DNA of 64,000 nt from contig CM035361.1 in the NCBI GenBank assembly GCA_020137815.1, positions 1,922,001 to 1,986,000 of the forward strand, written 5' to 3'. Source of the DNA: Hormiphora californensis (taxonomy: Eukaryota > Animalia > Ctenophora). Within the stretch, counting starts at the first letter, position 1. Every line of letters begins with the position of its first letter. The notes under the pieces were generated by a model. It was given only the letters and a program-made list of their open reading frames with translations. It had not been told where the DNA came from and ran no database searches. Positions 35,961-54,565 of the stretch are shown here, one piece after another. The position numbers and the translations under genes are program-made.

Positions 35961-38654
35961 ATGACAGAGATTTTAGCAGACAACTTCAAGTACTCAGTCA
36001 ACAATGTGGACATGGAGTGCAGGGTGGTCCTAACCGAATCTGGAGTTGGGATTCACGAGGGTACACGAGATACATGCATATCGTATGAAGTACATTCATC
36101 TTAGCGATGTGATAGGTAAGGCAATCAACTCTGAGTGACTACTGCACTATAGTAATAAATATGCTCTCTTGTGTAGTCACTTTTTGAGGGAGAGGGAGCT
36201 AGAGAGGGAGGCATTGAGAGGAAGATAGGGAAAGGAAGAGAAGTGATAATTAATGATAGTTAGAGATATATATGTAGAAATGTGTATGAGGATAATATGG
36301 GTATGATATTACCACTACACGTTTAGCATGTGATAATCTTATTCTTGTCTTAGCAATCCAATAGGCACTGAGGGCACTTGGTTTAGTTGACATTGGTACG
36401 GTGTAGTTGATATTGATCTTCTTGTTGGGCGATCTTGGGTTATCGCACGGGTCAAAGTTGAGGGGTTTATTTGAGTTTGGCTAATAGTAACATATATTAT
36501 ACCGATTACGTCTCAACTCACAATTGTTGTTGGCACTTTGCCCAACTGCACTGTTACATCAGTGATCTGTATCGAGATATATCACGAGTGCGTAAAATGA
36601 GAGAGTCGCAACTCTAATGTTGCGTTATTCCGTATGTATAGGCAAATCTGAACATCATGATTGGGGAGATTTTCTCAAGCGGAGTTTATAATAGCTTTAC
36701 TGGTTACTTCCAATTCTGACTGATTTGGTATCCCGGTACCAGGGTTATGGTACCCTGTTGACCACAAGCTATATTTCACAAGAAGCTGGGCAATTCCACA
36801 CACCTCCATATTAGCTGGCATACTTGGTAAAACCAATTAACTTCTTATAACTACTTAATTGACTAAGCTTAGAATTTCTCAGGTGCTAAGGTCCACTACG
36901 GGGCACGGGATCAGGTCTTCCTTGTTATACACTACCTACCACTCACCAAAAACAAGTAAGTATCGCTTGCTCTGCCAAACCCTCACAGAGCGTGTGATTT
37001 TATAGATAAAATGCAGTGTAAGCTACACAAACCAACCCTTCGCGTTTGTTGTGGAATGTGCAAGTTTAGCCAACTAGGTTTATACAAGGTTTATAATACT
37101 GTGTACTAACACGTCCAGTACTTGGCTAACTTTACAAGTATGACAATATGTGCAAACTAGTCGCCCTTACACCTCTAAAGTTGGGTAGAAAAGTATGGTT
37201 GTTCTTGGACACATATGTTTACCCTGCCATGGTATACCATTCTGTTCATTTGCACATTAATGTCTGCAGAAACCCCCACACATGACATGAAATCTGAAGT
37301 GTAACAGGGGAAGGTCGAAACATGAACCATTTTCAGCTACCCACACGAGTGTTAGCTCTTCATTTGGACCCCCACACATGTCACATAATGTGTAAAATAA
37401 CAATTCACATGGTATTCCTAATTCCATTCTCCACTACCCACACAAGTGTTATCTCTTCATCTTCACACTACAAATATCTATCTGCAGAAACCCTCACGCA
37501 TCACATAATTATTCACATACATTATCTCCATGTACACCTATAAAACAATTCCACCCAGGTTCAATGGGAAGTTGATGAGGGTAAAGAAGCAGGTGGTACT
37601 ATGTGCTACACAACATGAGACCCAACACGCTAACGTGAGACAGTGTGTTAGGTGGAAGAGTGCTGTGAAACGAACCATCTTCGGGTAAGATCAGATTTAT
37701 ACTACTTACTAGGAGCTGGGAGGGAAGTTATGTTACTCCAATTCCCGTTTACTAAGTACGTGATAGGAGAGAAAGAAAATCATATTCTGATAAGAGACTC
37801 CTACCGCGGTATAATCGATGTGACTGTCTCGAAATTGTAAAGTGGCCTACTTGAAGGCGATAACATAAAGGTGAAAACTAATACACCTTCTTTGGTTTTC
37901 CACTGTTTTATTATTTCTGCAGGCCCAGTGAAACAAGTGAGACGAAATGTCGAGAGCGAAAGTACCTTATATTTGTGAATCCTAAGGGCGGGAAAAAGTT
38001 GGCTAAAAAGATTTGGCTCAGCACCGGTAATTATGTTCATTACCTTTTATTCCCGTTTATTCCAAACTATTCATGTTTTATATTCACTTACATAAATATA
38101 TTTCAACACCTTAAACATGTTATTAATTTTACTTGTAACCTCTTTGTCCCACTAATTTCACCCCCTCTTGTAACCTCTTTGTCCCACTAGTACAGCCACT
38201 ATTTGATCTTGCTGGGATTGAGAGTGAGGTTGTATACACGGAATACAGTGGTCATGGAAGGGATTATATTAAGAGCTGTGAGAATCTAATGGATTATACT
38301 TCTATAGTAACTGTATCAGGTAATTAATTAATTAATTGATAATTGGGTAACCCATTTCTGGTAGGTTTGATAATTTACTGTTAACCCTTTGGGGACGATA
38401 AGCCCCCTGTCGAGAGAATTCTCTAAAACTTTCTGGAGACACTTACGTTATTACTTATTAGCTATGCCACGTTCGTTACTATGATTTTTAGAGAATGTAT
38501 AATTGCTTGGACCGTTTTGAAACACGCTAATTGCATGCAATTACACAAACATAACATGCTACTGCAGCAGCACAAAGAATTTATACTCTTTAGAGTCTCT
38601 TAATAACTGTTCCTTCTGACCCTCCCTATCTTTCTCTGTATGTCTATTGTTGAC

Positions 38655-38738
<84 letters not shown>

Positions 38739-41700
38739 TGTGTACTTATGTATCTCTGTGTTTGTTCTACACGAAACTGTTGTTTATGTTGGTTTCCCTA
38801 TTAGTCACTTCCTAGCTTACACTTTTGACACTAGATTAGAACACACATAGAGATATAGTTTGAGAGAAAGATGTTGAGAGAAATTGGGAGTCTAAAGCCT
38901 TCAGAATTATTTGTGTTTACCTATTTTTCTGTCTAGGTGATGGGATCGTCTTTGAAGTATTTAATGGGTTGATGAAGAGAGACGATTGGGAGACTGCCAT
39001 TAAAGTACCACTATCAATCATCCCTGGAGGATCAGGTGAGAAACTCTTTAAAGCACCTATCGTTCATTAACCCTTAACAAATTCCCATAAATTGAAAAAA
39101 AAACTGGATTTAAACTCCAGTTTGCCGTATCTTTAGAAAACCTAGCCATGACCTCACTCCTCACCAGACCTTACTGACTCAATATATTGATAATAATTTA
39201 CAGAACAGTCTCGCCATAACAGCTTCAAATCATGTGGTCAATTGCCATTCACACGCCGCTGTTTTCAGTGTTTCGGCGAAGACGGTACTTAGCCTTCCCC
39301 AGCAGAGCATGTTTGTAGGGCGCGGGGTACGAAGTCAGGAGAGAGATGCGCAGAGTGTCAACCGCGCGCACACTTCATGGAGAGTTTCGCTGGATCATAT
39401 CACAACCGCGTGACGGTGAAGTTATTATTTTGAAATTGCTTTAGCTGAATTGAAAGGATTTGGGTGCCGTAAACAGCTTGGTACTAGAGTTAGGAACAAT
39501 AGGGATTGATTATTAAGGGCCCGTCGGTTTTGCGTTTTGTCTATCCTGGAAAGTTATAGTCAGGAAGCAAGTTAGGGCGCGGTCGTGACCAAGGAAGGGA
39601 TGGTCGGACCGCCCTAAAACCGCTTTACGTTTGGTAACAATCAGCACCATTTCAGGAGTTTCTGTGAGCATTTTGAAGTGGGCACAACCAGCCAGTCAAG
39701 AGTTATGACGAAAAAACAGCTAAAAATGGCCCTTTTTATGACATTGTTATTCTGCTGGCTGAGAGAGCTTTAAATAATGAGTATGGCTCTGAAACTTCTT
39801 GTGAGGGTAGGAAAATCAAGCAAATTAGGTGCCTCTAGGGTATCGGATTGCTTGCTCTCACTAATGTCCATTTTTTTTCAACTGTTCACCCCCCAAAGTC
39901 GTGCGCGGAATTGTTTTGCGCGTTTATCACATGTTAACGTGTAGCGCGCGCAGCGTAAATTAAAATTATACCAAAACTAATTGAAATTAGTAGGCCGGAA
40001 AGGTTGCCCTATGATTTGAGCTACCTTTGCCATCGTAACATTCACGGGGTACAGTCAGGGTATAACCGATGCTTCTTCTACCTTCAAAAGTGAATGTACT
40101 GGTGCCAAAGGTAGCTCAAATCATAGGGCAACCTTTCCGGCCTACTAATTTCAATTAGTTTTGGTATAATTTGCATCATTTTTGGGATTTTTTATCCATT
40201 TAGATGTAGTAGAACAGGCAAGGAGAGGATGGAATCGCGAATTTGCAAAATTTTCATTTTTGACGTCATTTTGACGTCATTAAATGACGTCACGTTGTTA
40301 TGACGTCATATTGATGACGTCATATCATTGGGATTACCTAGATGAAGATACTGACCAAGTTTGAGATCGATTGGATGAGATTTGAGTCTGCTATGGCGAA
40401 AAAACCCATATCGTCATATCTATTTTTAAACAGTCATAACACTTTAGACGCGTTTTAAGACCCTTATACGTCTAGTTTTGAAAATTCGCAATATAGTTTC
40501 TGAAAGTTCAGACAATTCTCTTTCCATGATATAGCCTTCGATTTTCGATTAGAATCCGTCTTCAGGGTGTAAAATGAACTCAAAGAATTTTAGTCAGAGT
40601 CTGAAAAATGACGACTTTAAGACGTTCTGTAGGACGTTCCCGGCGATGAAAAGGGACCTCACATCAACTAATGCACACACATCCAGTAGATCTACCAGCT
40701 GTGAAAACGAGAAGTTTCTATCTCTTTTCGTTTGGCGTGAATATGGTTTATAAAAAGCGTCTCTCCTACGCGTGCGCGTGCGCGCGCGCGTGCATATGTG
40801 TTACACTGAATCTAGGGCAAATGGGACCTGTCTGTAACTTCAGTTCCAGATGAGATAGAGACTTGAAATTTTGAACTTAAGTTAATGACCCCGAGCCGGG
40901 TATACATTCCAAATTTCAAGTCAAACGGATGAATGGGAGCCATGCTATAGCCTTCTGAAATCTGGGTTTTCAGTCAAAACACCCATAAAACGTATAACTG
41001 CGTTTCTGGCGGCGCTTTGCTGTTTGGGGGAGGGGGAATGGCAACCTTTGCGCTTGCCAGCGCAGTGATATCGCACGCGCACGAGTTGAGGGGTGAACAG
41101 TTGAATAAAAATGGACTTTACTTGTATGCTTTAATCTGACCACTAATTGGGTAAATCTCGTCAAGTGATCACTTCACAAGCACGATTCCGTGAAAATTGC
41201 TAACTTCTCACGTGTTTGAGCAACTCTAATTAGACAACCATGAGATATACATAGTAACTTCAAAAAAAATTGTCTTCAATTTCAGACATTTCCCTACCCT
41301 CACAAGAAGTTTCAGAGCCATACTCATTATTTAAAGCTCTCTCAGCCATCAGAATAACAATGTCATAAAAAGGGCCATTTTTAGCTGTTTTTTCGTCGTA
41401 ACTCTTGACTGGCTGGTTGTGCCCACTTCAAAATGCTCACAGCAACTCCTAAAAATTGTACTGATTGTTACCAAACCGGTTTTAGGGCGGTCCGACCATC
41501 CCTTCCTTGGTCACGACCGCGCCCTAACTTGCTTCCTGACTATTAGGACTGGGATAGTTATCATGCTGCTGGGATTTATTCCATCTTTTTGATAGTCGAA
41601 TTGCGTGACCCGCTCCCCCCGTATGAATAATGTACATTGAATATATTCATTAAATATCACAGTTACGGTCTAGACTTGTAAAGCAATAAAGCATCCCAAA

Positions 41701-44700
41701 TGTATACGTCCTCGTTTTAAATCCCTGATTGAGAGAAAATATATATGGCCGATCTGATCAAATCTGACCAACTATGTACAGTAACAATTGCAAAATGATA
41801 CGAGATTTTATTGTTTACTCAAGTTTAATGTTGTAACACAATTGTCAGAACAATAACTCGTCGAGCACTTTACCAGGAATCCCTTCCAAATCAAAGTTAC
41901 ATTAGCAATTCTCTAATGATAAATCGGTTATCGTGGTCAATAAATTTGGGAATTTTCACTGCCTATATTATTACAACCGATTTATATACATTAGCATTAT
42001 CAATGACTGAAGGAATTAGGAAATGGTGCAAAGGTCTCCTGGAAAAAAAATAACCTCATTCGTGGGAAGGAGGTGGTGGAAGCACCAGGGACCACTGAGA
42101 ATTGAAATTCAATTTGTTGAGTTTAGAAGTGATGAGCGAGGAAAGGACAGTTGAGTTGAAAGGTTGTCATTTGTTTGATAGCCTCAATTATTTTTCAAGT
42201 TTCAAGTTTCAATGACTATACGGCCCAGACAGGGCAACTGGGCCAGCTAGTGATATAAACTGAACACTCCTGAGCATCAGAGCGGTATATATCCTGTATA
42301 CCCCGCCGACCCCGCCTGAGCGCACTGTCGCGACATTTGATAATTAAATTGGGGTCTGGGGCTGCCAGACAGGATATACCTCTGACTGAGAGTCTCAGAA
42401 ACTATCCTGATATTCTCAAGCACTTTGACATTAACGCATTAACGCATGAGATTAAAGGGTCTAAAAAGCTAATTTTTGGGGACGTCCAAATTTTTGGGGA
42501 TACAGTCGGGGATAAAGTTGGTACCGAATGGAGTGAACAGAAACATGATTGGACAATAATATTTCCCCGATCATTTTGTCATTTTCCTGCCCTCAAAAAA
42601 ACAATTATCAGTGAGATGTTTTGACAGGACCCTGGACGGCTTAAATTCTCTCTCTCCTAAAAATAAAACATAATATGGGCTGTGTCCAATACGTACTATG
42701 TAGTCAACTATCACGCGATATATCTTGAATCTTCTTCTTTTAGCTAAATAGTTCATTTAATTTGATTTTTTTTTCTAAGCTTATTTTTAACAAATAGGAA
42801 GCGACAGAGAAATAGGGGGAGAGATAGATAGCGAGATAGAAATTAAAGAAGAGAGATATAAAGTCTTCATGGTGATAATCACATTTCAATCTACTTATAA
42901 TAATCACACTTCAATATACTTATCTGTACATCAATCCAGTTAATCTGGGCCATTGCATCGTTAGATTGTTAGAAGGCCCAACCACGAATGTATAGAGAAA
43001 GAGGGAGTGGAAGTGAGAAAGAACGAATGAGAGGGAAATTGCAAAGTGCTTTTTTAGCACTTTGCAATTTCTCTCTCATTCGTTCATTCTCACTTCCAAA
43101 CGATAATCATAATATTTCCGTTATAAAAGCATCACTTTTGACGTGTCCAAAATATTTTTTCAATCATTGCTTTTTTCTGAATACTGTTTCATACTACCGT
43201 TTCATTTTACTTACAGTAGTTTTATATTGAGTGTTCCCTTTTTCCTAAAGTGGTGTAAATTTCCTTTGAAATCCGAATTGGAAGCCGCCATAAATATATT
43301 TCAAAGATCGTTCACTCTCAAGCTGCTCTCTACCATTTACTTGCATTTGACCAGGCAGCTCCACCTTGTTGTGCTACTCAATAACCTTTACAATTGTTAT
43401 GTTACCTTCCACAGATCTCAAACATGCGAGGTCCAATTGGACCATTTAAGAACGGAATTCACCCTAAACCTATGCGATGCCCGAAAGACGTACTACAATC
43501 CTCATGCTGCCCTCCCTTCGCTACCATCCCTTCATCGACCTTCTATATCACGTTAACTGCTGTTAACCTCGCCCTCGCTCCCATCATCCTTATCCTAAAC
43601 CGATGGGTTATCCTCTACCATACATCCAGAAAGGGTAACCGCTCCCTGGCCAGTAAACTGTATATTCATCTAGCGGTATGGGATTGTGTAACCGCGGTAA
43701 CCGCCCTTCTTCACGGGGGTTACATGATATTTTGGTTACTAGGTAACCAGGACTCTATTGTAAACTCGGTCGCCGTGGCAACTGTCTATGTAGCTACGAC
43801 TGTCAGTGTTCGGGGGAGTGTCTTTGCGAACGTGGTCCTGTCCGTTGTACGGAGTGTCAACATTTCAAAACCCTTTTATATGATCCGTAAGACTCTTCTA
43901 ACGGTTGCCATGGTAGCAGTACCAATGACTCTAATTCCCATCGCTGGAGTTGACCTTTGTTACTTTTTCTCCTTTGAGTATGATACCACACCACTATCAG
44001 GCTGGGAATATCGACACTATCACCGACAATTGTTCCTTGGGCCAGGCTTAGGGGTGGGATTGTTTGGCTTTATAATGAAAACCAAACACCATCATTTCTC
44101 AATGAGTGCCGTTATGCACCATTTCTCAAGTGTTTTCTTCCACCTTGCAACCTCTGTTTGTTTGGTTTGTCTAGTGTTTCAAACACGAGCAATATTGAAG
44201 TACAGGAAGAGGCTACAGAAAAATCGAGAAGAATCGGGAGGAGGAGGAGTTTCAGGAAGGATAAAGTATTCTGTTCAGAGCGGTAGCGTGCAACCGCCTG
44301 ATGTTGCGGTTAGGGCAATACAGTGGGGCATTGATCTAGTCCCTCCTTCTGGGATTGAAAGAAATTCAAGAACGCGAGTTGCTACTCGGAGGAGAGATCA
44401 GCGATCATCGGTCACACTTGGTGATCTTGCAATTCCTAGTGTTACTGGAAGTGGACCAGCTAGGAAACAAGGCTCTTTTGAAAGGAGAAGGATTGAAGAA
44501 GAAGGCTCTTTTGAAGGGAGAAGAATTGAAGAAGAAGGCTGTTTTGAAGGTAGAAGGGTTGAATTTGAAAGGAGAGGGATTGAACTTGAAGATCAAGGTG
44601 AAAGGACGAGTGATGAAGATTGTTTTGCTGGAGTTGAGTTAGTAAGATCGACATCTGAAGAGTCTGAAATCGACTGCAGTGGCAGTGAGGTTAAAGCATC

Positions 44701-46416
44701 AGTTATAGTTCACCAAAGTCGTTCGAATGTCATCCCGTCTTTACGGAAAAAAGATGCAACTTTTGAGGTATCAGACTCTTTTGAGGATCATGGCACAACA
44801 GCCTCTCCTCGGTCCTCATCTTTTTCATTATTCAGATTATCTTTAGCGTCCTCCGATTTCTCTTCCTCATCATCATTATCTGTGTTTCCTCGCTCCTCGA
44901 CCTCAACTTTCTCTCAAAGATCACTTTCCTTGTCCTCATCCGATGAGCAAGGTTCATTATGTGATGATGACCACGGCATTGAACCAATTCCCTCATCCCA
45001 ATTTGAGCAGCCTGCAACTAGTGATGACACGGTGCCTCAAGTTGAGCCCAATACAACTCTTCCACATATCCGATCCAATATCACTATCACCCTCCTAACC
45101 CTCTTCTTTATTATTACAAACTCTGTGTACACCGTGGTAGTGTCCAGTACCATAAGCAATGAACCTAGACGGAAATCTGGCTTGAATGCGGATACTTTGG
45201 CGTGGACGTATATAGCAAGTAGTGTGTGCCCCTTGATGAGTTCTCTAGTTAACCCCCTGGTGACAGTTCTAATGGGAAGACATAATGAATTGTGGAGGTT
45301 TATCAAGGATGATGTTTTGAGAATGTTTGGGAAGTTTTTGAAAATTGATCCCAATGGAATTTCCAGCTCTGGTCAGTAGGTATGTTTGGTACACGTAATT
45401 CCACTCCGTTAGACCCTAATAACGATTAAATAGTCAGTGACTCCGTTAGTAGAGTGTTTCTAGACCACAGTCAGACACTAGTAATTATAGTCATAACCAT
45501 TTCTAAAGCTGGTTCTTCTTTGGAGCAGCTGGTCCGTGTTAAGGATCTGACGGTTTACGATAAAGACTTCCTCGGATTCGCCCTTGCTGGGGCGGGGGGA
45601 GGGGGATTAAAGAGCTGTGTGCATTTCAATTGCAAACCTTCACGACTTAATATTTTGACATTTATATTTAATAGATCTGGCTGTAACCCTGAGATGCTTG
45701 TGCTGAAACTGACATTCCTTTTATCATTAATGAAATGTGTCAAAATTTTAATTTACTGGAGGCTTGGCTGTTCCCAATTCCTTCACATCAAATCTTAATG
45801 GTTTGGATCTCGTGTAGCTGACAGCTCTGGTTCAATCAATCGGGATCATTTATTGAGTTCGTGTTACGAAAGCAGGATCGAAAGACATGGATATTCTACG
45901 GAAATTCTTCGTGGGTGACATACAGCAACTTTGCATTTGTGAATTTTTCAAAACGTGAACCCCGGTCGGATTTCTTGAACACGTATTTTTGACTTTAGGA
46001 CGATATATCTAAGACTTGGAACGTCAATCTTGCAACCAAAATGTTCGCCAGACAATTCTCTAGAACACTGGTTTTTGTTAGAACCATTTTGACCAATTTT
46101 TCGATAAGTTTTGATTAGTTTGACGGAACCCGATCATGACCAGTAATCGCAGGTCACGCAAAGACAGTGGGACACCCTGTATATTGTCGATGTTAATCGA
46201 TTAACATGGGCTATTTAGCCCGCTGTGTCACCCACGAAGATTCGTAAAACTAATACGAACTCAATGATATCATTATTTCAAATGCCATGGTCTGATAATC
46301 CTAGAGTGAGGGTGAGGGACCCGTATCTTCCCCATAAGAGACCAACTTACAAGAGTACCCGGGTCACTCACTCACTCACTCTCTCTCTCTCACACTCTCT
46401 CTCACTCTCTCTCTCA

Positions 46417-46460
<44 letters not shown>

Positions 46461-49400
46461 TATTGGCTACTACCTGGTTCTTCTCCCCATGAAATGTAAC
46501 AATTTTTTCAGGTAACGGTTTGTGTGCAGCTATTCTCCACCAATCTGGTGTACCGTTGACGCTGATTGACGCTGTTTTTGTGGCCATCCGGGGATCATCA
46601 ACTCCATTGGATCTGGTTAAAGTTGAACAGGTTGGTTTGGTTTGGTTTGGTTTGGTTTGAATTTGGTTTGGTTTGGTTTGAATTTGGTTTGGTTTGGTTT
46701 GGTTTGGTTTGGTTTGGTTTGGTTTGGTTTGGTTTGGTTTGGTTTGGTTTGGTTTGGTTTGGTTTGGTTTGGTTTGGTTTGGTTTGGTTTGGTTTGGTTT
46801 GGTTTGGTTTGGTTTGGTTTGGTTTTTAGCACTATGGTTCTAAAAACTACATACATATATGAATCAAATGAATATTATTGCTGCTGCAGCTATTTTCTAG
46901 CACATTAAAAAATATCTTCATAGCTCCATTCGTGGAAAGCAGCACCCCATATCGATGCAGTATGGGGTGCTGCTTTCCAGGAACGCAGCTATAAAGAATA
47001 AAGATATTGCAATTTTTTAATGTGCTACAAAATGGGGTCCCCACCTTGTACAGATGGTGTTTCAGGCTGCATCTAGATATTCTAGAACAACCTTTATTCG
47101 ATCTCAATCTTTATCTCATTAAACTGCAACTGTCCCCCCCCCCCCTAACTGTCCATAAACAATTAATAAATCATCTTGATAAATTTGTACAAGGTATTAT
47201 AGACGGGTGGGCCTGGGGTAGTTAATACATATATATCATTGTTTCCAATGTTCCAGTGTCATGATACACCCACCCACTCAACTGATGTGAATTACACTGG
47301 AAACAATGATTATATACACGGTTCCATTTGAACTATCATAAAATGTCTTATATATCTGATTCATCCCATGAAATAATATTTATACATCATGAACTACTTT
47401 ATTTATACATCATGAAATAATATCTTCCTATAATATTTATACATCATCATGAAATAATCTTCCTCAGGAGGGAACTGAGGTGTGGTCCTTTCAGTCTGTA
47501 TCTTGGGGCTTTTTTAGCCTTATCGATATAGAGAGCGAGTCTTACAGGTCATACATATTACTTGATTAAGTGATGCATTCTTGTTAGGCATGAAACGTGT
47601 GATTCTGCTTGTATACAATAATTCCGTGATGTGTGCAATAAATTATACTTATTTTATATTCATACGGGGAAGGAAAATGGAGACCCCCATAAGACAAGTG
47701 TCACTCACTACATATATGGCGAATTCCCCAAAGTTATAATAGGTTGTCATGCATCGTGGGTAGGCGATAGTCGATATATCGACTATCGCCTGCCCACGAT
47801 GCATGACAACAATCTGAGTTACGATCTATATACTCAGATCGTAACTCAGATCGTACTACAGAATTATAAAAAAATATATTTTTATAATATTATCGGAAAT
47901 TGAATGTATATATTTTCCTGAATTTTTATAGACTAAAATAATGATCGTACCCCAGTATTCAAATTTGTCTGTGAGTTTGTTTATTTGTTTATTTGTTTTC
48001 ACTCACATGTCTCTGTATATTTTTCAGGAAAGGGACACCGTATGGTCATTTCTATCTATTGCGTGGGGTCTACTCAGTGCGGTCGACATTGAGAGCGAGA
48101 GACTTCGGTAAATTCCTATACTTGATAACTTTAACATGAAGCATTTTTTGTATGTTCACTGTTCACATGCCTATTATAGCAGCTGTATCACCCATGTTAT
48201 ATCCCTATAAAAGCAGCTGTATCTTGCCTTGTTAGGCCCTGTCTCGCCATATGCACGGTGAAACCTCTTTTACAAGATGTGTTAGGGTTAGAACAAGCTG
48301 GATCCCTGTTATAGCCCTGTTATAGCACCTTGTTGATTGAGTAATTCATCAACCCCCCTCCTCTTATTCAACAAGAAGCAGCTGTGTGTTCTTTAGAATT
48401 ACAGAACTGCATTATTCAATGGAATATAATGTCTCGCCTTGTGAGAGAGTACCACACGGCATACCATTAAAAGCACATTGCTATTAGCACTTTTAAGTTT
48501 CACAGCCCACATACAAATATTATTTGAAATACAGCTGGCTATGCAACAAACAGACGTCAGTGCTATGCCAAGAGAGTGAAATTTGTAAATGTTTAACATC
48601 AAAACATGATACAATATGGTGTTATGAACAATCTGGGGCCTTTTGAAGCATATTATAATTGTGGGATTCTATACGGGCTGGACCACATGTGTACACTGTA
48701 AAACATGTGGGTCAGCCCAGCCCGTACATTAACTAACACAGTAGACTAACACAGTAGACAGTTGACAGTTGGTTGACTAAAGTGTTGGGCTGTCAGTACG
48801 ATGGGTCTGATGGGTCTGACTGCAGTTGTTAGGTCCATCGTCAGTGAGGCCAATCTTCTCACTGAAATATTATACTTTCTGTTTCGTGTTCTGTGTGTTG
48901 TGTCTTTCTTGCACAGATTGATACATATTCAATGAAGCATGTTAAGTGTTTGTCTGTTTGTGCCCTGTTTGTGTGATACTAAATGTTTATTAAATAGATA
49001 TGTATCATACAATGGGGGATGATAGAACGAGAGAACAAAAGAAGACGATATTGTTCTAATCGTCTCCCAATTATAGTATGATTGCATATCTAACCACTAA
49101 ATCTAACTATTAAATCTAACTACTACACTATCTAACTATAATACTGCTAGGTGGATGGGGGAGGCCCGGTTTACTGTTGAAGCGGTTAAAAAACTTGTCT
49201 CCTTCCCGATAAAAAGTGGGAGAGTGTGGTTTAGTAAAATAGAGCAGGATCAGACGGCCAGTTCAGAAGTTCAGGATGCCACGACGTGTACTGCAGAAGC
49301 TAATGGTAAGTTATATTGACACATGGTACAGTCGGAGGGTTCTTTCCTTTAAATCGGAGTGTCCTTTAAATCGGGGTCAAATACTGGCAATTTCCTATTT

Positions 49401-49889
49401 CGGAGGAAGATTATCCTGCCGTTAAATCGTGGTCCGACTGTATTGATCCCAGTTATCCTGACTTAATATTTTGGTTATCCTAGCTCGACTATCTCTCACG
49501 AAAATGTCAAATATACGGGTTATCCAGTATATCCGGGTTATCCGGGATTATTTATCCCCCTAATACTAGCTTCCATTTCGATGAAGCATATATTTGAGTG
49601 TTTTCTCTCCTCATATGCTATACGATCTCTCTCTCTATCTCTCGATCGCTCTATCGGCATATGCTCTCGAATCTCTCTATCTCTTCTCTCTCTCTCAGAT
49701 AGAGAGGAGATGGCTCTTGCAGAGAGACGCTCGCTCTCTCGCTAGCGAGAGAGAGCGCGAAGACGAGCGAGCGCGAGAGGAGAAGAGAGAGATGGAGAGA
49801 GAGCGAGACGAGCGAGCGATGAGAGAGACTGCGTCGCGATAGAGGATCGATCTCGCTAGATCTCGCTTATCTATCTACTATCTTCGAGA

Positions 49890-49986
<97 letters not shown>

Positions 49987-52900
49987 GCAGAGGTAGTTGA
50001 TCAAGCTGATGAAGTAGTGGATAAGGGATCACATAAACAACTCTCCAAAATAACGGAGAGGGTGAGGAATGATAGTTGTGGGAGCAACTCTGATGATGTT
50101 GAGTAAGTTAATTGTTTAATTAATTAATAACAGTAAACAAGTAACAAGTTATGTAAACAAATATTAAGTACACAATGTGTACAATTAGTTTTTTATTTTC
50201 AAAGTCCCCGATATTATTCCTCCCCTATTTTGTGCAGAACAGAACTGGACCCATCCTTTATTTTTATTTACACTCCCCTCCCCCATTTTGTGCAGAACAG
50301 AACTGGATCCTTCCTTTGATTTCTCCGCTTTGAACGAGTCAGATTCAGATGACGCTGAGGTATGAATAAATAATGTCGACTAAATTTGTCTTTACTTTCG
50401 AGATTAGGAGCATGGCATAATCTGCTGAAATTATTTTTTGAAGAGTTGTATAAATCAACAACTTCTTGTATCCCCGTTTCAGAGTTTTATTAATGAGCGA
50501 ATACCAGACAGATCCCGGACCGTTTCAGATTTACCCGCTAACTCATCGGTAAGATGTCCAATACCATTCTAACACCCAGTACCATTTTAAATTACGGTTA
50601 TTACACCTCAAACTATCGGACTTATAATTGTGGGAAGAGTTTCTGCACGCTATTAAATATGACATCGAGGTTTGACTGAATTAATTTTAAATTTAACTCA
50701 CTACATTGGAACGCGTGACTGAATATCTCATCCACCCACCAGAACTCAGTTGAGTGTAAGTGCAGGACCTGTTCGCCACCACAATATATAGGGGATGATG
50801 ATGTTGGGGCTCGTCAGAAACTGGTGGAACAAATCGGACTGAAAGACAAGATACCTGATGATTGGACACTGGTTAGTAATTTGTAATTACAGTCGGACCC
50901 CGATTTAGGGACACCCTTGGGGGAAAGGTTAATTTCCTATATCGGGGGAAAAAAATCCTGTCCCTAAATCGGGGTGCCACTAAATCGGGGGGCCCTAAAT
51001 CGGGGTCCGACTGTAATTATGTAATTATTAATTAATTAGTTAATTAAATTTAGTATCTAATTAAACCAATTTTTGTTTGGTATCTCTTTTTTTTATTATT
51101 TCGAAACTTCTCGAATTCTTACCTTCATTTAAATTATTTGTATCTACGTCAGTAACTCAAAAGACAGGAACCACCCCATGTCAAATGAATGTTTCTCCCA
51201 GTAATACAATTATAGGAGAGTTTTTTATTTGACTTTGACGTAGGCGACTTCCAGTTCCACGATTTGAAATGTCTCAAACTATTTATTTCTCAAACCATTC
51301 TGGATCCTCAATACATATTCAATAACAACCCAAGTGACCACTGACCACCCCCTCTCTCACCAACTGCACCCAATTAATCCTCCCCTCTCTTACCAACCAC
51401 CCAATTAATCCTCCCCTCTCTCACCAACTGCACCCAATTAATCCTCCCCTCTCTCACCAACTGCACCCAATTAATCCTCCCCTCTCTAACCAACTGCACC
51501 CAATTAATCCTCCCCTCTCTCACCAACTGCACCCAATTAATCCTCCCCTCTCTCACCACCCACCTAATTATTCCTCCCCTCTCTGTCAGGTTGACGGCAA
51601 CTTTGCGACCATAATGGCATTTACCCTAACCCACCTTTCTCTGGGATACCAGTGTGCATCTAACTTCCGATTAGACGCCGGTTTTGTCTACCTTATGCAC
51701 AGCGGGGGCGGCTCAAAAAAGGTAAACCAATTAACTAACTAATTAATGTAATTATGTTTCAGCTGGAAGGTCGGTTTGCGTGTGTGACTGCGTTTTTCCA
51801 CTCCCACCTGAGTTTCACATACCCCGTGACACCCTACCTAAGGTTGGATTGTGGGTACATGCTGCTGATGTGGAGCGAGAGCAATAGTTTCGAGAGAACG
51901 GTAGACTGCTGCGTGTTTCATCTCATACAGGTTTGTAGCTATCCCCCGTCAAAGAAATTAATTTCCCAGTGCGCAAAAAATTCGAAGTTCGAATTATGGG
52001 TTTTGATTTTCATCTTGATTCTCGAGTTTTGATCTCATAATTGTGCGTTTGTTGAGTGTATCTCCGGAGAAATAAGATAAGAGAGAGATAAGAGAGAGAT
52101 AAGAGAGAGATAAGAGAGAGATAAGAGAGAGATAAGAGAGAGATAAGAGAGAGATAAGAGAGAGATAAGAGAGAGATAAGATAAGAGAGAGATAAGAGGG
52201 ATGCCTGAAACTAAACCCCCATAAAAAAGTCGCTTGGCAAATTCCCTCGTCGCTCGGCAATTGGTTCGGCAACAACAGGTGGTTTGCCGAGCCAGTCGCT
52301 CGGCTAATCAAGGAAGTCGCCGTGTTTTCACCGCGTTCTTACAGAAAAAGTACATTTTTTCAGCACTTTTTTTCAAAATCTCCTGCTGAAAAATACAAAG
52401 TGCTGAAAAAATGTGCTTTTTCTGTAAGAACGCGGTGAAATCACCGAGATTTCCTTGATTAGCCGAGCGACTGGCTCGGCAAACCACCTGTTGTTGCCGA
52501 ACCAATTGCCGAGCGACGAGGGAATTTGCCAAGCGACTTTTTTATGGGGGAAAGGAGCATCTTTACAGCACCTTAGTTTGACTTTGAGAGCCACAAGAAA
52601 ATAACCCTGATAAAATAGATGGGATAATATGTCCCCCCCCCCTCCCCTCCCCGCCCCATATTTAAATATATGAATCTGACTATTTGAGCAAGGTGGGTAG
52701 GTGGTAGTACCCACCTTTCTCAAAGCCAAGTAGCCAGAGTCATTAACCCAGCAACCTTTGATATATAGAACCGATCGCAAATATTTTATTCGATTTCGAG
52801 GAAATAAAATCTTGCTAGATAAAACTCTATCTATAAAGAAAATTTGCATAAGATTCAATTTCAATTTGAAATTCAATTTCAATTTGAAATTTAAAGTTGA

Positions 52901-54051
52901 AATATCATACATACTAGTATAGGGGAACAGGGGAACTAGGGGAACAGGAACTAGTTAAACCATGAAATAGCTCTGAAATTCAGAGCTATTTCATGGTTTA
53001 ACTAGTATAGTTCCTGTCTGTGTCGATTGGAGGTTGATATTTATCTAGACTTGAATATCTTCCCCTAGTATGTATGAACAGGGGAACTAGGGGAACTGGA
53101 ACTAGTTAAACCATGAAATAGCTCTGAAATTCAGAGCTATTTCATGGTTTAACTAGTATAGTTCCTGTCTATGTCGGTTGGAGGTTGATATTTATCTAGA
53201 CTTGAATATCTTCCCCTGGCCTAAAGTCGAATTTTTTAATCAAGGGACAGGGGGCCGCGCGTTCAGAGGGGTCGCGCGGCTTTGTATTTGCGCGTGATAA
53301 TCGAGATCAAGTTCCTGGCAATCTTAAGACTTGAACCCGGAAGCGTTGGAAAGATAATTTTAAGACCTTTTCAACGCAACCAAGATCGAGTCTTTATCTT
53401 ATCAGGAACAGAAGATATGAGCAAATACGTTTAGCACGCGCAAAAAGACTTTTATAAATGCGCGGCCCCTGTCCCTTGATTAAAAAATTCGACTATAGTA
53501 TGATATTTCAACTTTAAATGTCGTACGAGATACAGATATTTAAGGTATCCTCATAGTGTATTAGTGTATGGTTGTGCAATTGACACCGATTAGCTGAACT
53601 TAATCAACTCCAACTGATCTCTACCCGCAGGACTTTTTGAGGTTGTTGATACAAGACTGTACTCCCGAATCCAATGATACTCGAACAATACACTTCGAAA
53701 AGGTTGGTAACTGCTAGGTTGACAGTATTGAGCCTAGAATATATACGTCATGTTTAGTCTGTATTTCACAATCATGGCAGACCATATTGAGCTTGCAAAC
53801 TCCAAAATGACCAAAAATCATGAAACCCATATACTTCTCGATACTCAACAACTCGATACGGTAGCTAATTCCGGTCTCTCATCTTGAATCTATTCATTTC
53901 GCAGGTGAGAGCATTTCGTTTGGAGCCTGAGATAGCAGAGGAGGGTGCTTATGTGACGATAGACGGTGAACTGGTGCCCTATGAAGCACTCCACGCGTGT
54001 ATCTACAAGGGCCTTGCTCGTGTCATGTGCCTGTCAACCTCCGCTAGATAA
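35961..54051 (+). CDS. SPHK: Sphingosine kinase (SPHK1/2 family), multi-exon
   Basis: Exons 35961/36085-36115, 36883-36955, 37559-37684, 37923-38026 (FVNPKGG), 38191-38319, 38937-39035 (GDGIVFEVFNGLMKRDDWETAIKVPLSIIPGGS), 46512-46630 (GNGL), [47468-47547 or 48028-48107], 49151-49305 (RWMGEARFT), 49991-50102, 50296-50359, 50483-50548, 50743-50871, [51590-51721 or 51763-51900], 53631-53702, 53905-54051 (AFRLEP...IDGE). Start uncertain. Confidence 0.92.
39556..41543. mobile_element. Composite TIR element (~260-bp inverted arms, internal inverted repeat ~39963-40172)
   Basis: atagtcaggaagcaagttagggcgcgg... / ...ccgcgccctaacttgcttcctgactat. Confidence 0.75.
43424..45379 (+). CDS. Single-exon rhodopsin-class (class A) GPCR with very long third intracellular loop, nested in an SPHK intron
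   Basis: Seven hydrophobic segments; TM1 ..ILN, TM2 LAVWD, TM3 LSVVRSVNISKPF, TM7 SSLVNP; ATG 9 nt after a ccacag acceptor. Confidence 0.88.
   Translation: MRGPIGPFKNGIHPKPMRCPKDVLQSSCCPPFATIPSSTFYITLTAVNLALAPIILILNRWVILYHTSRKGNRSLASKLYIHLAVWDCVTAVTALLHGGYMIFWLLGNQDSIVNSVAVATVYVATTVSVRGSVFANVVLSVVRSVNISKPFYMIRKTLLTVAMVAVPMTLIPIAGVDLCYFFSFEYDTTPLSGWEYRHYHRQLFLGPGLGVGLFGFIMKTKHHHFSMSAVMHHFSSVFFHLATSVCLVCLVFQTRAILKYRKRLQKNREESGGGGVSGRIKYSVQSGSVQPPDVAVRAIQWGIDLVPPSGIERNSRTRVATRRRDQRSSVTLGDLAIPSVTGSGPARKQGSFERRRIEEEGSFEGRRIEEEGCFEGRRVEFERRGIELEDQGERTSDEDCFAGVELVRSTSEESEIDCSGSEVKASVIVHQSRSNVIPSLRKKDATFEVSDSFEDHGTTASPRSSSFSLFRLSLASSDFSSSSSLSVFPRSSTSTFSQRSLSLSSSDEQGSLCDDDHGIEPIPSSQFEQPATSDDTVPQVEPNTTLPHIRSNITITLLTLFFIITNSVYTVVVSSTISNEPRRKSGLNADTLAWTYIASSVCPLMSSLVNPLVTVLMGRHNELWRFIKDDVLRMFGKFLKIDPNGISSSGQ
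46631..46825. repeat. (GGTTT)n pentanucleotide microsatellite starting at a splice donor
   Basis: Direct reading. Confidence 0.95.
47468..47547 (+). CDS. SPHK alternative exon 1A
   Basis: 80 nt, phase 0->2, EGTEVWSFQSVSWGFFSLIDIESESYR; weak donor gtcata. Confidence 0.8.
48028..48107 (+). CDS. SPHK alternative exon 1B
   Basis: 80 nt, phase 0->2, ERDTVWSFLSIAWGLLSAVDIESERLR. Confidence 0.87.
50890..51013. mobile_element. pogo/Tigger-like MITE family (other copies 49329-49440, 56661-56759, 61885-62053)
   Basis: TA|cagtcggaccccgattta...taaatcggggtccgactg|TA. Confidence 0.85.
51345..51585. repeat. 33-bp tandem repeat immediately upstream of SPHK exon 2A
   Basis: cccctctctcaccaactgcacccaattaatcct x ~7. 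Confidence 0.9.
51590..51721 (+). CDS. SPHK alternative exon 2A
   Basis: 132 nt, phase 0->0, VDGNFATIMAFTLTHLSLGYQCASNFRLDAGFVYLMHSGGGSKK. Confidence 0.85.
51763..51900 (+). CDS. SPHK alternative exon 2B
   Basis: 138 nt, phase 0->0, LEGRFACVTAFFHSHLSFTYPVTPYLRLDCGYMLLMWSESNSFERT. Confidence 0.8.
52073..52197. repeat. (agataagagag)-type short tandem repeat
   Basis: Direct reading. Confidence 0.9.
52216..52550. mobile_element. Palindromic MITE with CCC termini
   Basis: cccccataaaaaagtcgcttggcaaattccc / gggaatttgccaagcgacttttttatggggg. Confidence 0.8.
52914..53498. repeat. ~170-bp direct duplication with an internal palindrome, followed by a TIR element 53221-53498
   Basis: actagttaaaccatgaaatagctctgaaattcagagctatttcatggtttaactagt occurs twice; agtcgaattttttaatcaagggacagg / cctgtcccttgattaaaaaattcgact. 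Confidence 0.7.
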
Positions 54052-54565
54052 TAATGAGACTATCAAAACACGTGGTACTATCACGTGATATATAGTGACT
54101 CTCGTGTGAAGGATGTTATCATATGTTTAGGTCAAAGCTGGACAGTTATTGACAGCTTGTTGACTCGGTAAACCAGAATTGTATGTGAATATGTTGTGAG
54201 ATAATATTATTAATAAGGAGAGATTGGAAAGAAGCAAATTTATTGTTAATTGTGTTGTGATTTGTGAATGTGAATATTATTGACACTGACAGTCACCCCT
54301 CACTCACAGCTAGTGCTATAACAGTCTGATGTGCTTGTACAGATGAATGCAAGTACATATAATGTATTGATATTAAACACTGATAATGTATTAACACTGA
54401 AATTTTGTACTGTAAAATGTGAATCGATTCTTTTAGTGAACTGCACGGCAACTTTTCACTGAAAAGTTGCCGTGCTATGCAGAGCTGAGCCAGAACGCGA
54501 CGGCGTACTTGGTTACGAAGTCACCCCTATTATTGCATATAGCTAGCGCAGGGGGAATTCCATTA

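What the first reader, a model, noticed from the sequence alone, without database searches (positions are those of the whole stretch)
46512..53702. One kinase gene may build 2-4 different lipid pockets combinatorially
Both duplicated pairs map to the substrate pocket, while ATP-binding and catalytic exons are single copy. Inference: splicing substitutes for gene duplication (SPHK1/SPHK2-like diversification), with either coupled or free 2x2 choice. With the neighbouring Slo gene this makes three ligand-site exon switches in ~35 kb, each with a different apparent exclusion device (hairpin plus frame, frame, short spacer). This hints at a lineage-wide, under-annotated mutually exclusive exon system.
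Basis: inference. Interest (0 to 1): 0.86.

Follow-up and report, generated by a model that had tools for sequence, protein, structure and literature searches.

The report
Two alternative exon pairs, comb-jelly sphingosine kinase
The only sphingosine kinase gene of this comb jelly carries two old pairs of interchangeable exons that encode part of the lipid-binding pocket, so one gene can probably make up to four enzyme variants; this is a known way of diversifying a protein that had not been described for this enzyme.

Summary
The window holds a complete sphingosine kinase (SphK) gene (35961-54048, + strand). It has two tandem pairs of homologous exons:
- A1 47468-47547 and A2 48028-48107, 80 nt each, 54% aa identity.
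- B1 51590-51721 and B2 51763-51900, 132 and 138 nt, 39% aa identity, 41 nt apart.

Genome-wide, each exon tested (A2, B2) matches only itself and its partner. No second SphK gene was found.

Both pairs are old. Bolinopsis microptera RefSeq isoforms X1-X3 carry A2+B2, A1+B2 and A2+B1 type exons. In exon trees the copies group by type, not by species.

On human SPHK1 numbering, A covers residues 159-185 and B covers 253-296. Together they hold 9 of 16 published pocket residues, and the copies differ at 5 of those 9.

Exclusion devices:
- A: taking both or neither shifts the frame and gives an early stop.
- B: the 41-nt spacer is too short to be spliced (inferred).

No RNA of this species could be laid on the locus, so use here, free or coupled choice, and different lipid specificity all remain inferred. 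Twenty other 10-kb stretches (200 kb) held no comparable pair, so the window's density is not typical of the genome.

Verdict: a new member of a known kind, mutually exclusive exons. The same scan had already noted both pairs on this window.

The parts
35961..54048 (+). Whole sphingosine kinase gene: 15 coding exon positions, two of them with two alternative copies
   Evidence: Exon-by-exon tblastn of ctenophore SphK proteins (Bolinopsis X2 and X3, Mnemiopsis, P0019) covers the whole protein. Borders were read from the sequence.
35961..36115 (+). First coding exon (MTEILADNF...). It has an apparent +1 frame shift relative to orthologues near 36062-36073.
36883..36955 (+). N-terminal exon 2 (AKVHYGARDQVFLVIHYLPLTKN)
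37559..37684 (+). N-terminal exon 3 (FNGKLMRVKKQ...)
37923..38026 (+). Exon with the nucleotide-binding motif FVNPKGGKK (single copy)
38191..38319 (+). Exon ending in ...IVTVS(G) (single copy)
38937..39035 (+). Catalytic exon (G)DGIVFEVFNGL...IIPGGS(G). It holds the equivalent of SPHK1 Asp81 and is single copy.
   Evidence: DAGK_cat match of 29.6 bits
39036..46511 (+). 7476-nt intron that holds a nested 664-codon open frame (43385-45376, same strand)
46512..46630 (+). Exon (G)NGLCAAILHQSGVPLTLIDAVFVAIRGSSTPLDLVKVEQ, single copy, ends in phase 0
47468..47547 (+). Alternative exon A1 (EGTEVWSFQSVSWGFFSLIDIESESY+AG), 80 nt, with a weak donor (GTCATA)
   Evidence: It groups with the A1-type exon of Bolinopsis isoform X2.
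48028..48107 (+). Alternative exon A2 (ERDTVWSFLSIAWGLLSAVDIESERL+CG), 80 nt, with a strong pyrimidine tract. This is the type seen in most ctenophore transcripts.
49151..49305 (+). Exon (R)WMGEARFTVEAVKKL..., the equivalent of SPHK1 186-~236 including Phe192 and Thr196; single copy
50301..50359 (+). Small exon (E)LDPSFDFSALNESDSDDAE, conserved in ctenophores
50483..50548 (+). Small exon SFINERIPDRSRTVSDLPANSS
50743..50871 (+). Exon NSVECKCRTCSPP...IPDDWTL, ends in phase 0
51349..51584 (+). Six copies of a 33-nt C/T-rich repeat that abut the B1 acceptor (74% pyrimidine)
51590..51721 (+). Alternative exon B1 (VDGNFATIMAFTLTHLSLGYQCASNFRLDAGFVYLMHSGGGSKK), 132 nt
   Evidence: It is 97% identical to the Pleurobrachia bachei model P0001 and 75% to Mnemiopsis.
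51722..51762 (+). 41-nt spacer between B1 and B2, with a branch-point-like CTAAC 16 nt from the B1 donor and 24 nt from the B2 acceptor
   Evidence: The shortest other intron of the gene is 123 nt.
51763..51900 (+). Alternative exon B2 (LEGRFACVTAFFHSHLSFTYPVTPYLRLDCGYMLLMWSESNSFERT), 138 nt
   Evidence: It forms a clade with the Bolinopsis B2-type exon and P0007 (97/94).
53631..53702 (+). Exon DFLRLLIQDCTPESNDTRTIHFEK, the equivalent of SPHK1 ~297-320 (the alpha-9 side of the pocket); single copy
53905..54048 (+). Last coding exon VRAFRLEPE...VTIDGELVPYEALHACIYKGL..., with the stop codon

Best explanation
This is the single sphingosine kinase gene of a pleurobrachiid comb jelly, most likely Hormiphora californensis. 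It carries two independent clusters of mutually exclusive exons that arose by tandem exon duplication before pleurobrachiids and lobates separated.

A mature mRNA takes one of A1/A2 and one of B1/B2, which allows up to four proteins. These would share the ATP-binding and catalytic half and differ in two segments of the C-terminal lipid-binding domain.

Shown:
- The exon anatomy.
- The uniqueness of the copies in the genome.
- Conservation of the copies by type in other ctenophores.
- Three of the four combinations annotated as Bolinopsis RefSeq isoforms.
- The homology mapping to SPHK1 residues 159-185 (A) and 253-296 (B).
- That taking both or neither A exon gives a premature stop.

Inferred:
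- B1 and B2 cannot be joined because the 41-nt spacer puts the B1 donor about 16 nt from the likely B2 branch point. This would be steric exclusion, as in alpha-tropomyosin exons 2 and 3.
- A2 and B1 are the default exons and A1 and B2 the regulated ones, judged from splice-site strength and from which types dominate in transcripts of relatives.
- The variants change the shape or gating of the lipid channel. The copies differ at the equivalents of Phe173, Ile174, Val177, Leu259 and Ala274.
For: Gene model and exon pairs.

Uniqueness: each exon matches only itself and its partner in the whole genome. The SphK orthologue matches only this locus apart from a weak AGK hit.

Conservation: the B1/B2 profile finds ctenophore proteins. 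One is a genomic open frame with a B1-like and a B2-like exon in tandem (P0002). One is a spliced B2-like fragment (P0006). Bolinopsis isoforms X1, X2 and X3 are A2+B2, A1+B2 and A2+B1. Identity matrices and reciprocal tblastn sort the exons by type. In trees the B2 types form a clade at 97/94 and the A1 types at 81/80, both inside a ctenophore clade.

Frame: both-in or both-out of the A exons gives stops within 9-19 codons of the next exon.

Structure: the family profile scores 430.9 bits against human SPHK1 with a gapless C-terminal alignment. An AlphaFold model of the A1+B2-type Bolinopsis isoform has pLDDT 77-94 over both alternative segments. It matches SPHK1 crystal structures at TM 0.85-0.88.

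Pocket residues come from PMC6904568 and PMC11859825.
Against: - No RNA of this species was seen. The one listed run laid nothing on the exons. No protein of this species is in the protein collections.
- Gnomon isoforms are built from short reads, so the three Bolinopsis combinations are not phased.
- A1 sits on a long branch (1.59) and has a weak donor, so it could be little used here.
- In a Bolinopsis-like genomic frame the B1-B2 spacer is 93 nt, not 41. Steric exclusion is therefore not a conserved property of the pair.
- Positions 272 and 288, two of the three that separate vertebrate SphK1 and SphK2 pockets, are identical in B1 and B2.
- Earlier notes of this scan report that for other duplicated exons in this genome only one copy was seen in RNA. 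I did not check those notes.
Confidence: 0.8

Rival explanations
1. In this species one copy of one or both pairs (A1 and/or B2) is a silent relic. Only A2+B1 mRNA is made, and the gene yields one enzyme.
For: No RNA evidence was obtained here. A1 has a weak donor (GTCATA) and the longest branch in the exon tree. Most ctenophore transcripts and models carry A2 and B1 types. Earlier notes of this scan report single-copy use for other pairs of this genome (not checked).
Against: Both minor copies keep an open frame, AG/GT borders, the same phase and every invariant catalytic or head-group residue (Ser168, Trp171-Gly172, Asp178, Glu-Ser-Glu, Arg185; His267-Leu268, Gly283). They group with the same exon type of a distant ctenophore. 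That would not be expected of unselected DNA, given that the two copies are only 54-62% identical at DNA level. Both types are used in Bolinopsis models and in independent transcript contigs (P0139, P0006, P0019).
Confidence: 0.15
2. The exon choice is real but does not tune substrate specificity. It would instead tune something else carried by these segments: gating of the lipid entrance, membrane engagement, stability, turnover or regulation.
For: Head-group ligands and several tail contacts (178, 168, 268, 272, 288) are the same in both copies. Many differences lie outside the listed pocket residues, such as the loop 270-278, positions 284-289 and the 2-5 residue longer end of B2 types. In SPHK1 the helix encoded by the A exon is described as part of the lipid gate.
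Against: Five listed pocket positions do differ. At positions 177 and 259/261 the differences are type-specific and hold across species, and a type-specific Q/L difference also holds at position 167, which is not a listed pocket residue. This fits selection on channel shape.
Confidence: 0.35
3. The pairs arose independently and recently in each lineage (convergent tandem duplication) and are not an old conserved system.
For: The A exon has only 26 codons and its tree is weakly resolved (81/80).
Against: The B2 types of this genome and of Bolinopsis form a clade at 97/94, apart from the B1 types. Within-species identity of the copies (39% and 54% aa) is lower than between-species identity of the same type (65-75% for B1, 69% for A2).
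Confidence: 0.05

Closest known systems
Bolinopsis microptera 'sphingosine kinase 2-like' isoforms X1-X3 (XP_063692264.1, XP_063692265.1, XP_063692266.1/XP_063692267.1; NCBI automated annotation)
   Same: This is the orthologous gene, 60% identical to the ctenophore SphK transcript P0005 that was used as the search query. The isoforms differ exactly at the two segments encoded by the A and B exons, and the exon types match those of the window.
   Different: It is a different order of ctenophores. The B1-B2 spacer inferred from a Bolinopsis-like genomic frame is 93 nt, not 41. It is an automated annotation, and no paper describing it was found.
Alpha-tropomyosin exons 2 and 3 (steric exclusion, Smith and Nadal-Ginard 1989; from my own knowledge)
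   Same: Two adjacent alternative exons cannot be spliced to each other, because the upstream donor lies too close to the branch point of the downstream exon.
   Different: Here the whole spacer is 41 nt, and the branch point is only inferred from a CTAAC motif. No splicing experiment exists.
Pyruvate kinase PKM exons 9 and 10 (M1/M2; from my own knowledge)
   Same: An enzyme gene with two equal-length alternative exons whose length is not a multiple of three. The exons replace a ligand-binding segment and leave the catalytic core unchanged.
   Different: PKM has one cluster that changes an allosteric site. Here there are two clusters in one gene, and both lie in the substrate channel.
Vertebrate paralogues SPHK1 and SPHK2
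   Same: Two kinase forms with the same catalytic machinery and slightly different lipid channels. Their pockets differ at Ile174, Met272 and Phe288 of SPHK1 (PMC11859825), and all three positions fall inside the A or B exon.
   Different: The vertebrate forms are separate genes. In the window only position 174 of those three differs between the copies, and other positions (173, 177, 259, 274) differ instead.
Mutually exclusive exon cluster of the Mnemiopsis leidyi muscle myosin Mhc2 gene (PMC3912159)
   Same: A predicted mutually exclusive exon cluster in a ctenophore that replaces a nucleotide-pocket loop.
   Different: It is another gene family with a single cluster.

Membership tests
Sphingosine kinase (DAGK_cat lipid kinase superfamily) | DAGK_cat catalytic domain (PF00781) | tested here: met
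   The exon at window 38921-39055 scores 29.6 bits against a cut-off of 23.6. The orthologue P0018 scores 89.4 bits.
Sphingosine kinase (DAGK_cat lipid kinase superfamily) | Conserved motifs: NPxxGxG, SGDG (catalytic Asp81) and GGSGN | tested here: met
   FVNPKGGKK, SGDGIVFEV and IIPGGSGNGL are read across the exon borders. These columns are invariant in the 52-sequence family alignment.
Sphingosine kinase (DAGK_cat lipid kinase superfamily) | Sphingosine head-group ligands equivalent to Ser168 and Asp178, and the ESE..R motif | tested here: met
   Present in both A1 and A2.
Sphingosine kinase (DAGK_cat lipid kinase superfamily) | Closer to SphK than to DGK, AGK or CERK, in sequence and in fold | tested here: met
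   The family profile scores 430.9 bits against SPHK1 and 106 bits against AGK. The model matches SPHK1 at TM 0.85-0.88 and AGK at 0.71.
Sphingosine kinase (DAGK_cat lipid kinase superfamily) | Phosphorylates sphingoid bases | not testable with these tools
   Needs an enzyme assay.
Mutually exclusive exons from tandem exon duplication | Adjacent homologous exons of the same phase and nearly the same length, each with AG/GT borders | tested here: met
   A is 80/80 nt and B is 132/138 nt.
Mutually exclusive exons from tandem exon duplication | Mature transcripts hold exactly one copy | tested here: inconclusive
   Met in relatives. All 13 ctenophore proteins aligned hold one B-type exon, and all that span the A region hold one A-type exon. 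Both types occur. It was not testable in this species: one run was listed and nothing was laid on the exons.
Mutually exclusive exons from tandem exon duplication | A device that prevents double inclusion or double skipping | tested here: met
   A: both-in or both-out shifts the frame and gives early stops. B: the 41-nt spacer compares with a shortest other intron of 123 nt. The steric mechanism itself is inferred. Skipping both B exons would stay in frame.
Mutually exclusive exons from tandem exon duplication | Both copies kept by selection | tested here: met
   The copies group by type across pleurobrachiid and lobate ctenophores. Support is strong for B and modest for A.

The most novel reading that the evidence does not exclude
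Ctenophores, which have a single sphingosine kinase gene, would encode a small combinatorial set (2 x 2) of lipid channels by splicing. The four isoforms would prefer different sphingoid bases or chain lengths and would be used in different cell types. This would be the first lipid kinase whose substrate channel is assembled from alternative exon modules, an old alternative to the SPHK1/SPHK2 gene duplication of vertebrates.
Probability: 0.3. Interest if true: 0.65.

Novelty: new member of a known kind. Interest (0 to 1): 0.45.

Why it matters
Sphingosine-1-phosphate signalling is studied almost entirely in bilaterians, which diversified the kinase by gene duplication. Here an early-branching animal lineage keeps one gene but has preserved two exon switches in the lipid-binding half for a very long time. 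The switches sit at the segments that hold the three residues separating the vertebrate SphK1 and SphK2 pockets.

This gives a natural experiment on which parts of the J-shaped channel set specificity or gating. It also offers four ready-made natural chimaeras to express and compare.

The gene is also a clean case for studying how exon exclusion is enforced in ctenophores, because one gene shows both a frame device and a spacing device. The kind of mechanism is well known, and automated annotation of Bolinopsis already lists the isoforms, so the advance is modest.

Tried and rejected
RNA evidence:
- The look-up of sequencing runs on 46500-54100 listed one small run of the same species label, holding next to none of the words.
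- The second call, on 46830-52070, laid only four 31-letter contigs on a simple repeat and nothing on any exon.

Protein searches:
- Searches with the Pleurobrachia fragment P0001 and with the spliced fragment P0006 brought nothing from this species.
- Exon E4 alone found nothing in the PDB. Orthologues and a family profile were used for the mapping instead.

Closed or exhausted tools:
The genomic context of the Bolinopsis, Mnemiopsis and unnamed ctenophore genes could therefore not be read, and the species of P0005, P0017 and P0019 stay unknown.
The genome sample is only 200 kb.

Other checks:
- RNA pairing that could loop out B1: a 19-nt AT-rich complementarity between 51027-51047 and the spacer. 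The duplex is -20 kcal/mol, and 1 of 60 shuffles and 1 of 60 random pieces reach it. I rejected it as evidence and keep it only as a weak lead.
- The first two versions of my tandem-exon detector missed the known pairs. The cause was that alignments run a few bases over the splice sites. The corrected version was used.
- SphK isoform sets of ten non-ctenophore clusters (insects, mites, spider, tick, frogs) show no substitution-type block at the A or B segment, while the Bolinopsis control does.

Exons were searched singly by reference, and natural orthologous proteins stood in for the whole protein.

Full report
WHAT IS THERE

The window is eukaryotic DNA. The genome it comes from has 110,691,255 bases in 45 contigs, and the window is contig 12, 1,922,001-1,986,000. 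Earlier notes of the scan call the organism a comb jelly. The published Hormiphora californensis assembly is 110 Mb in 44 scaffolds (PMC8527503). A Pleurobrachia bachei gene model (P0001, EukProt) is 97% identical to exon B1. I therefore take the organism to be H. californensis or a very close relative. This is an inference.

A DAGK_cat match at window 38921-39055 showed that the kinase gene starts far upstream of the finding. Exon-by-exon tblastn with ctenophore sphingosine kinase proteins covers the whole protein. Reading the borders gives these coding exons on the + strand:
- 35961-36115
- 36883-36955
- 37559-37684
- 37923-38026
- 38191-38319
- 38937-39035
- 46512-46630
- A1 47468-47547 or A2 48028-48107
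- 49151-49305
- 50301-50359
- 50483-50548
- 50743-50871
- B1 51590-51721 or B2 51763-51900
- 53631-53702
- 53905-54048 (with the stop)

All exons have AG/GT borders and their phases fit.

THE OBSERVATION

A1 and A2 are both 80 nt with the same phases. They are 54% identical in protein and 62% in DNA. B1 (132 nt) and B2 (138 nt) are both phase 0-0. They are 39% identical in protein and 54% in DNA, and 41 nt apart.

In the whole genome, B2 and A2 each match only themselves and their partner. A detector that I wrote looks for tandem, splice-compatible, homologous open segments. In the window it recovers exactly these two pairs and the Slo pair at 17560-17687 / 17856-17986, apart from plain DNA repeats.

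ONE GENE

A Mnemiopsis SphK protein finds only this locus in the genome, plus a weak hit to an acylglycerol-kinase-like gene. The other DAGK_cat loci carry diacylglycerol-kinase motifs (L001, L002, L004), an AGK-like frame (L003) or a ceramide-kinase-like motif (L005). At this sensitivity there is a single SphK gene.

AGE AND USE IN RELATIVES

A profile of B1 and B2 was searched against 1.84 billion representative proteins and gave 12 hits. They include:
- a genomic open frame with a B1-like exon, 31 in-frame codons, then a B2-like exon (P0002);
- a full-length 582-aa ctenophore protein (P0005);
- a spliced fragment that joins a B2-like exon to the last two exons (P0006).

A search with P0005 brought the NCBI Bolinopsis microptera isoforms and a Mnemiopsis protein. 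Aligned, Bolinopsis X1, X2 and X3 are identical except at the two segments in question:
- X1 = A2-type + B2-type
- X2 = A1-type + B2-type
- X3 = A2-type + B1-type

Every aligned ctenophore protein carries exactly one B-type exon, and every one that spans the A region carries exactly one A-type exon.

Identities sort by type. Window B1 is 65-75% identical to lobate B1 types and 29-38% to B2 types. Window B2 is 47-56% identical to B2 types. Window A2 is 69% identical to A2 types. Window A1 is 53% identical to the Bolinopsis A1 type against 46% to its A2 type. Reciprocal tblastn agrees.

In a tree rooted by other animals, all ctenophore B exons form one clade (91/92). Inside it the B2 types of this genome, Bolinopsis and P0007 form a clade (97/94). 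The A1 types group at 81/80, with a long branch for the window's A1. So the B duplication, and probably the A duplication, happened in the ctenophore lineage before pleurobrachiids and lobates separated, and both copies have been kept since.

Ten isoform sets of SphK from insects, mites, a spider, a tick and frogs show no such block.

WHERE THE PAIRS LIE IN THE PROTEIN

Natural orthologues were used instead.

A 52-sequence family profile matches human SPHK1 at 430.9 bits, with a gapless alignment over the C-terminal domain (single sequence). A family alignment with the window's exons added as fragments places A on SPHK1 residues 159-185 and B on 253-296.

An AlphaFold model of Bolinopsis X2 (A1-type + B2-type) has pTM 0.78 and pLDDT 77-94 over both alternative segments. 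SPHK1 crystal structures are its best matches, at TM 0.85-0.88. In the model:
- A is a beta-hairpin plus the first helix of the lipid site.
- B is a beta-hairpin, a loop and a strand just before the helix encoded by the next exon.

Published tail-contact and head-group residues of SPHK1 are:
- Phe173, Ile174, Val177, Asp178, Phe192, Thr196, Leu259, Leu268, Met272, Leu299, Phe303 and Met306 (PMC6904568);
- Ala274, Phe288, His311 and Leu319, re-numbered by -86 from PMC11859825.

Of these sixteen, four lie in A, five in B, two in the exon after A and five in the exon after B. The copies differ at 173 (F/L), 174 (F/L), 177 (I/V), 259 (T/C) and 274 (C/V). They agree at 178, 268, 272 and 288.

The three positions said to separate the SphK1 and SphK2 pockets (174, 272, 288) all fall in the alternative exons. 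Only 174 differs here.

That the pockets differ in function is plausible but not shown. Half of the pocket is also encoded by single-copy exons.

HOW EXCLUSION WOULD WORK

Pair A: 80 is not a multiple of three. Read after A1, exon A2 is out of frame and the next exon then stops after 19 codons. With neither A exon, the next exon stops after 9 codons. Both products would be truncated well before the last junction and should be removed by nonsense-mediated decay (inferred).

Pair B: double inclusion would stay in frame, but the spacer is 41 nt. The other introns of the gene are 123-7476 nt. The spacer holds a CTAAC 16 nt from the B1 donor and 24 nt from the B2 acceptor. A donor that close to the branch point cannot be used with it, as established for alpha-tropomyosin exons 2 and 3 (my own knowledge; inferred here). 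In the Bolinopsis-like genomic frame the spacer is 93 nt, so this device may be peculiar to the pleurobrachiid gene.

Splice-site strength: A2 and B1 have the stronger sites. B1 is preceded by six copies of a 33-nt C/T-rich repeat. A1 has a weak donor (GTCATA) and B2 a poor pyrimidine tract. This fits A2 and B1 being the commoner types in transcripts of relatives.

A 19-nt AT-rich complementarity between the intron before B1 and the spacer is only marginally better than chance.

WHAT IS NOT SHOWN

No RNA of this species could be laid on the locus. No protein of this species is in the collections searched. The Bolinopsis combinations come from automated models and are not phased. Whether the two choices are free or coupled is open.

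THE WIDER CLAIM

- Mutually exclusive exons have been predicted in a ctenophore before (Mnemiopsis Mhc2, PMC3912159).
- Earlier notes of this scan list further candidates in this genome (not checked by me).
- In 200 kb taken from 20 other places (all within the first 2.5 Mb of their chromosomes, not spread along them), my detector found none. It does find all three pairs of the window.
- At the window's density about nine would be expected, so the window is not typical.
- The sample is too small to say more than that the density is below roughly 15 per Mb.

VERDICT

This is a real, old, double mutually-exclusive-exon arrangement in the single sphingosine kinase gene of ctenophores. It replaces two segments of the lipid-binding domain. 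The mechanism is of a known kind. The case is undescribed in the papers searched but is implicit in RefSeq isoforms of Bolinopsis. The functional reading, different lipid pockets, is a reasonable hypothesis that the isoform-phasing and enzyme-assay steps listed as next steps would test.

Noticed in passing
window 43385-45376 (+): A 664-codon stop-free frame lies on the same strand inside the 7476-nt intron of the kinase gene. It has hydrophobic stretches and a serine-rich tail, and no Pfam family matches it. It is probably a nested intronic gene, a class reported as common in Hormiphora (PMC8527503).
   Followed up: partly
window 36062-36073: The first coding exon of the kinase gene is shifted by +1 relative to all ctenophore orthologues: 10 nt where 9 are expected, at a CACGAG...CACGAG repeat. 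It could be an assembly error, an allele, or use of the in-frame ATG at 36085.
   Followed up: partly
window 50228-50320: The acceptor region and first codons of the small exon 50301-50359 are duplicated about 70 nt upstream (ATTTTGTGCAGAACAGAACTGGAYCCWTCCTTT). Using the upstream copy would run into a stop, so it is a possible decoy 3' splice site.
   Followed up: no
window 51349-51584: Six copies of a 33-nt C/T-rich repeat (74% pyrimidine) end at the acceptor of exon B1. This could be a long pyrimidine tract or a binding platform for a splicing regulator.
   Followed up: no
window 51027-51047 and 51729-51747: A 19-nt AT-rich complementarity joins the intron before B1 and the 41-nt B1-B2 spacer. 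It would loop out B1. The duplex is -20 kcal/mol against -14.2 +/- 2.4 for shuffles, and 1 of 60 shuffles reaches it.
   Followed up: partly
window 52216-52550 and 52914-53215: The intron after B2 holds an inverted repeat with 154-nt arms (97% complementary, 27 nt apart). It also holds a 151-nt tandem repeat that itself contains 28-nt perfect hairpins. These look like small transposable elements.
   Followed up: no
window 46632-46830: A (GGTTT)n-type microsatellite of about 200 nt starts two bases after the donor of exon 46512-46630. It made the reads tool refuse the first stretch.
   Followed up: no
window 58805-58968 and 59716-59885: Two segments about 900 nt apart are similar in two reading frames (71% DNA identity). 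This is a diverged DNA repeat rather than an exon pair.
   Followed up: no
orthologue P0018 residues 1-120 (window exons 35961-37684): The first ~120 residues of ctenophore and many invertebrate and fish SphK proteins form a confidently predicted beta-rich domain followed by a long helix (pLDDT about 80-90). The human SPHK1 crystal constructs lack it.
   Followed up: no
P0138 (XP_063691517.1, Bolinopsis): A second, 227-residue Bolinopsis model repeats the C-terminal part of the kinase with a B2-type exon. It may be a partial duplicate or an assembly or annotation artefact.
   Followed up: no
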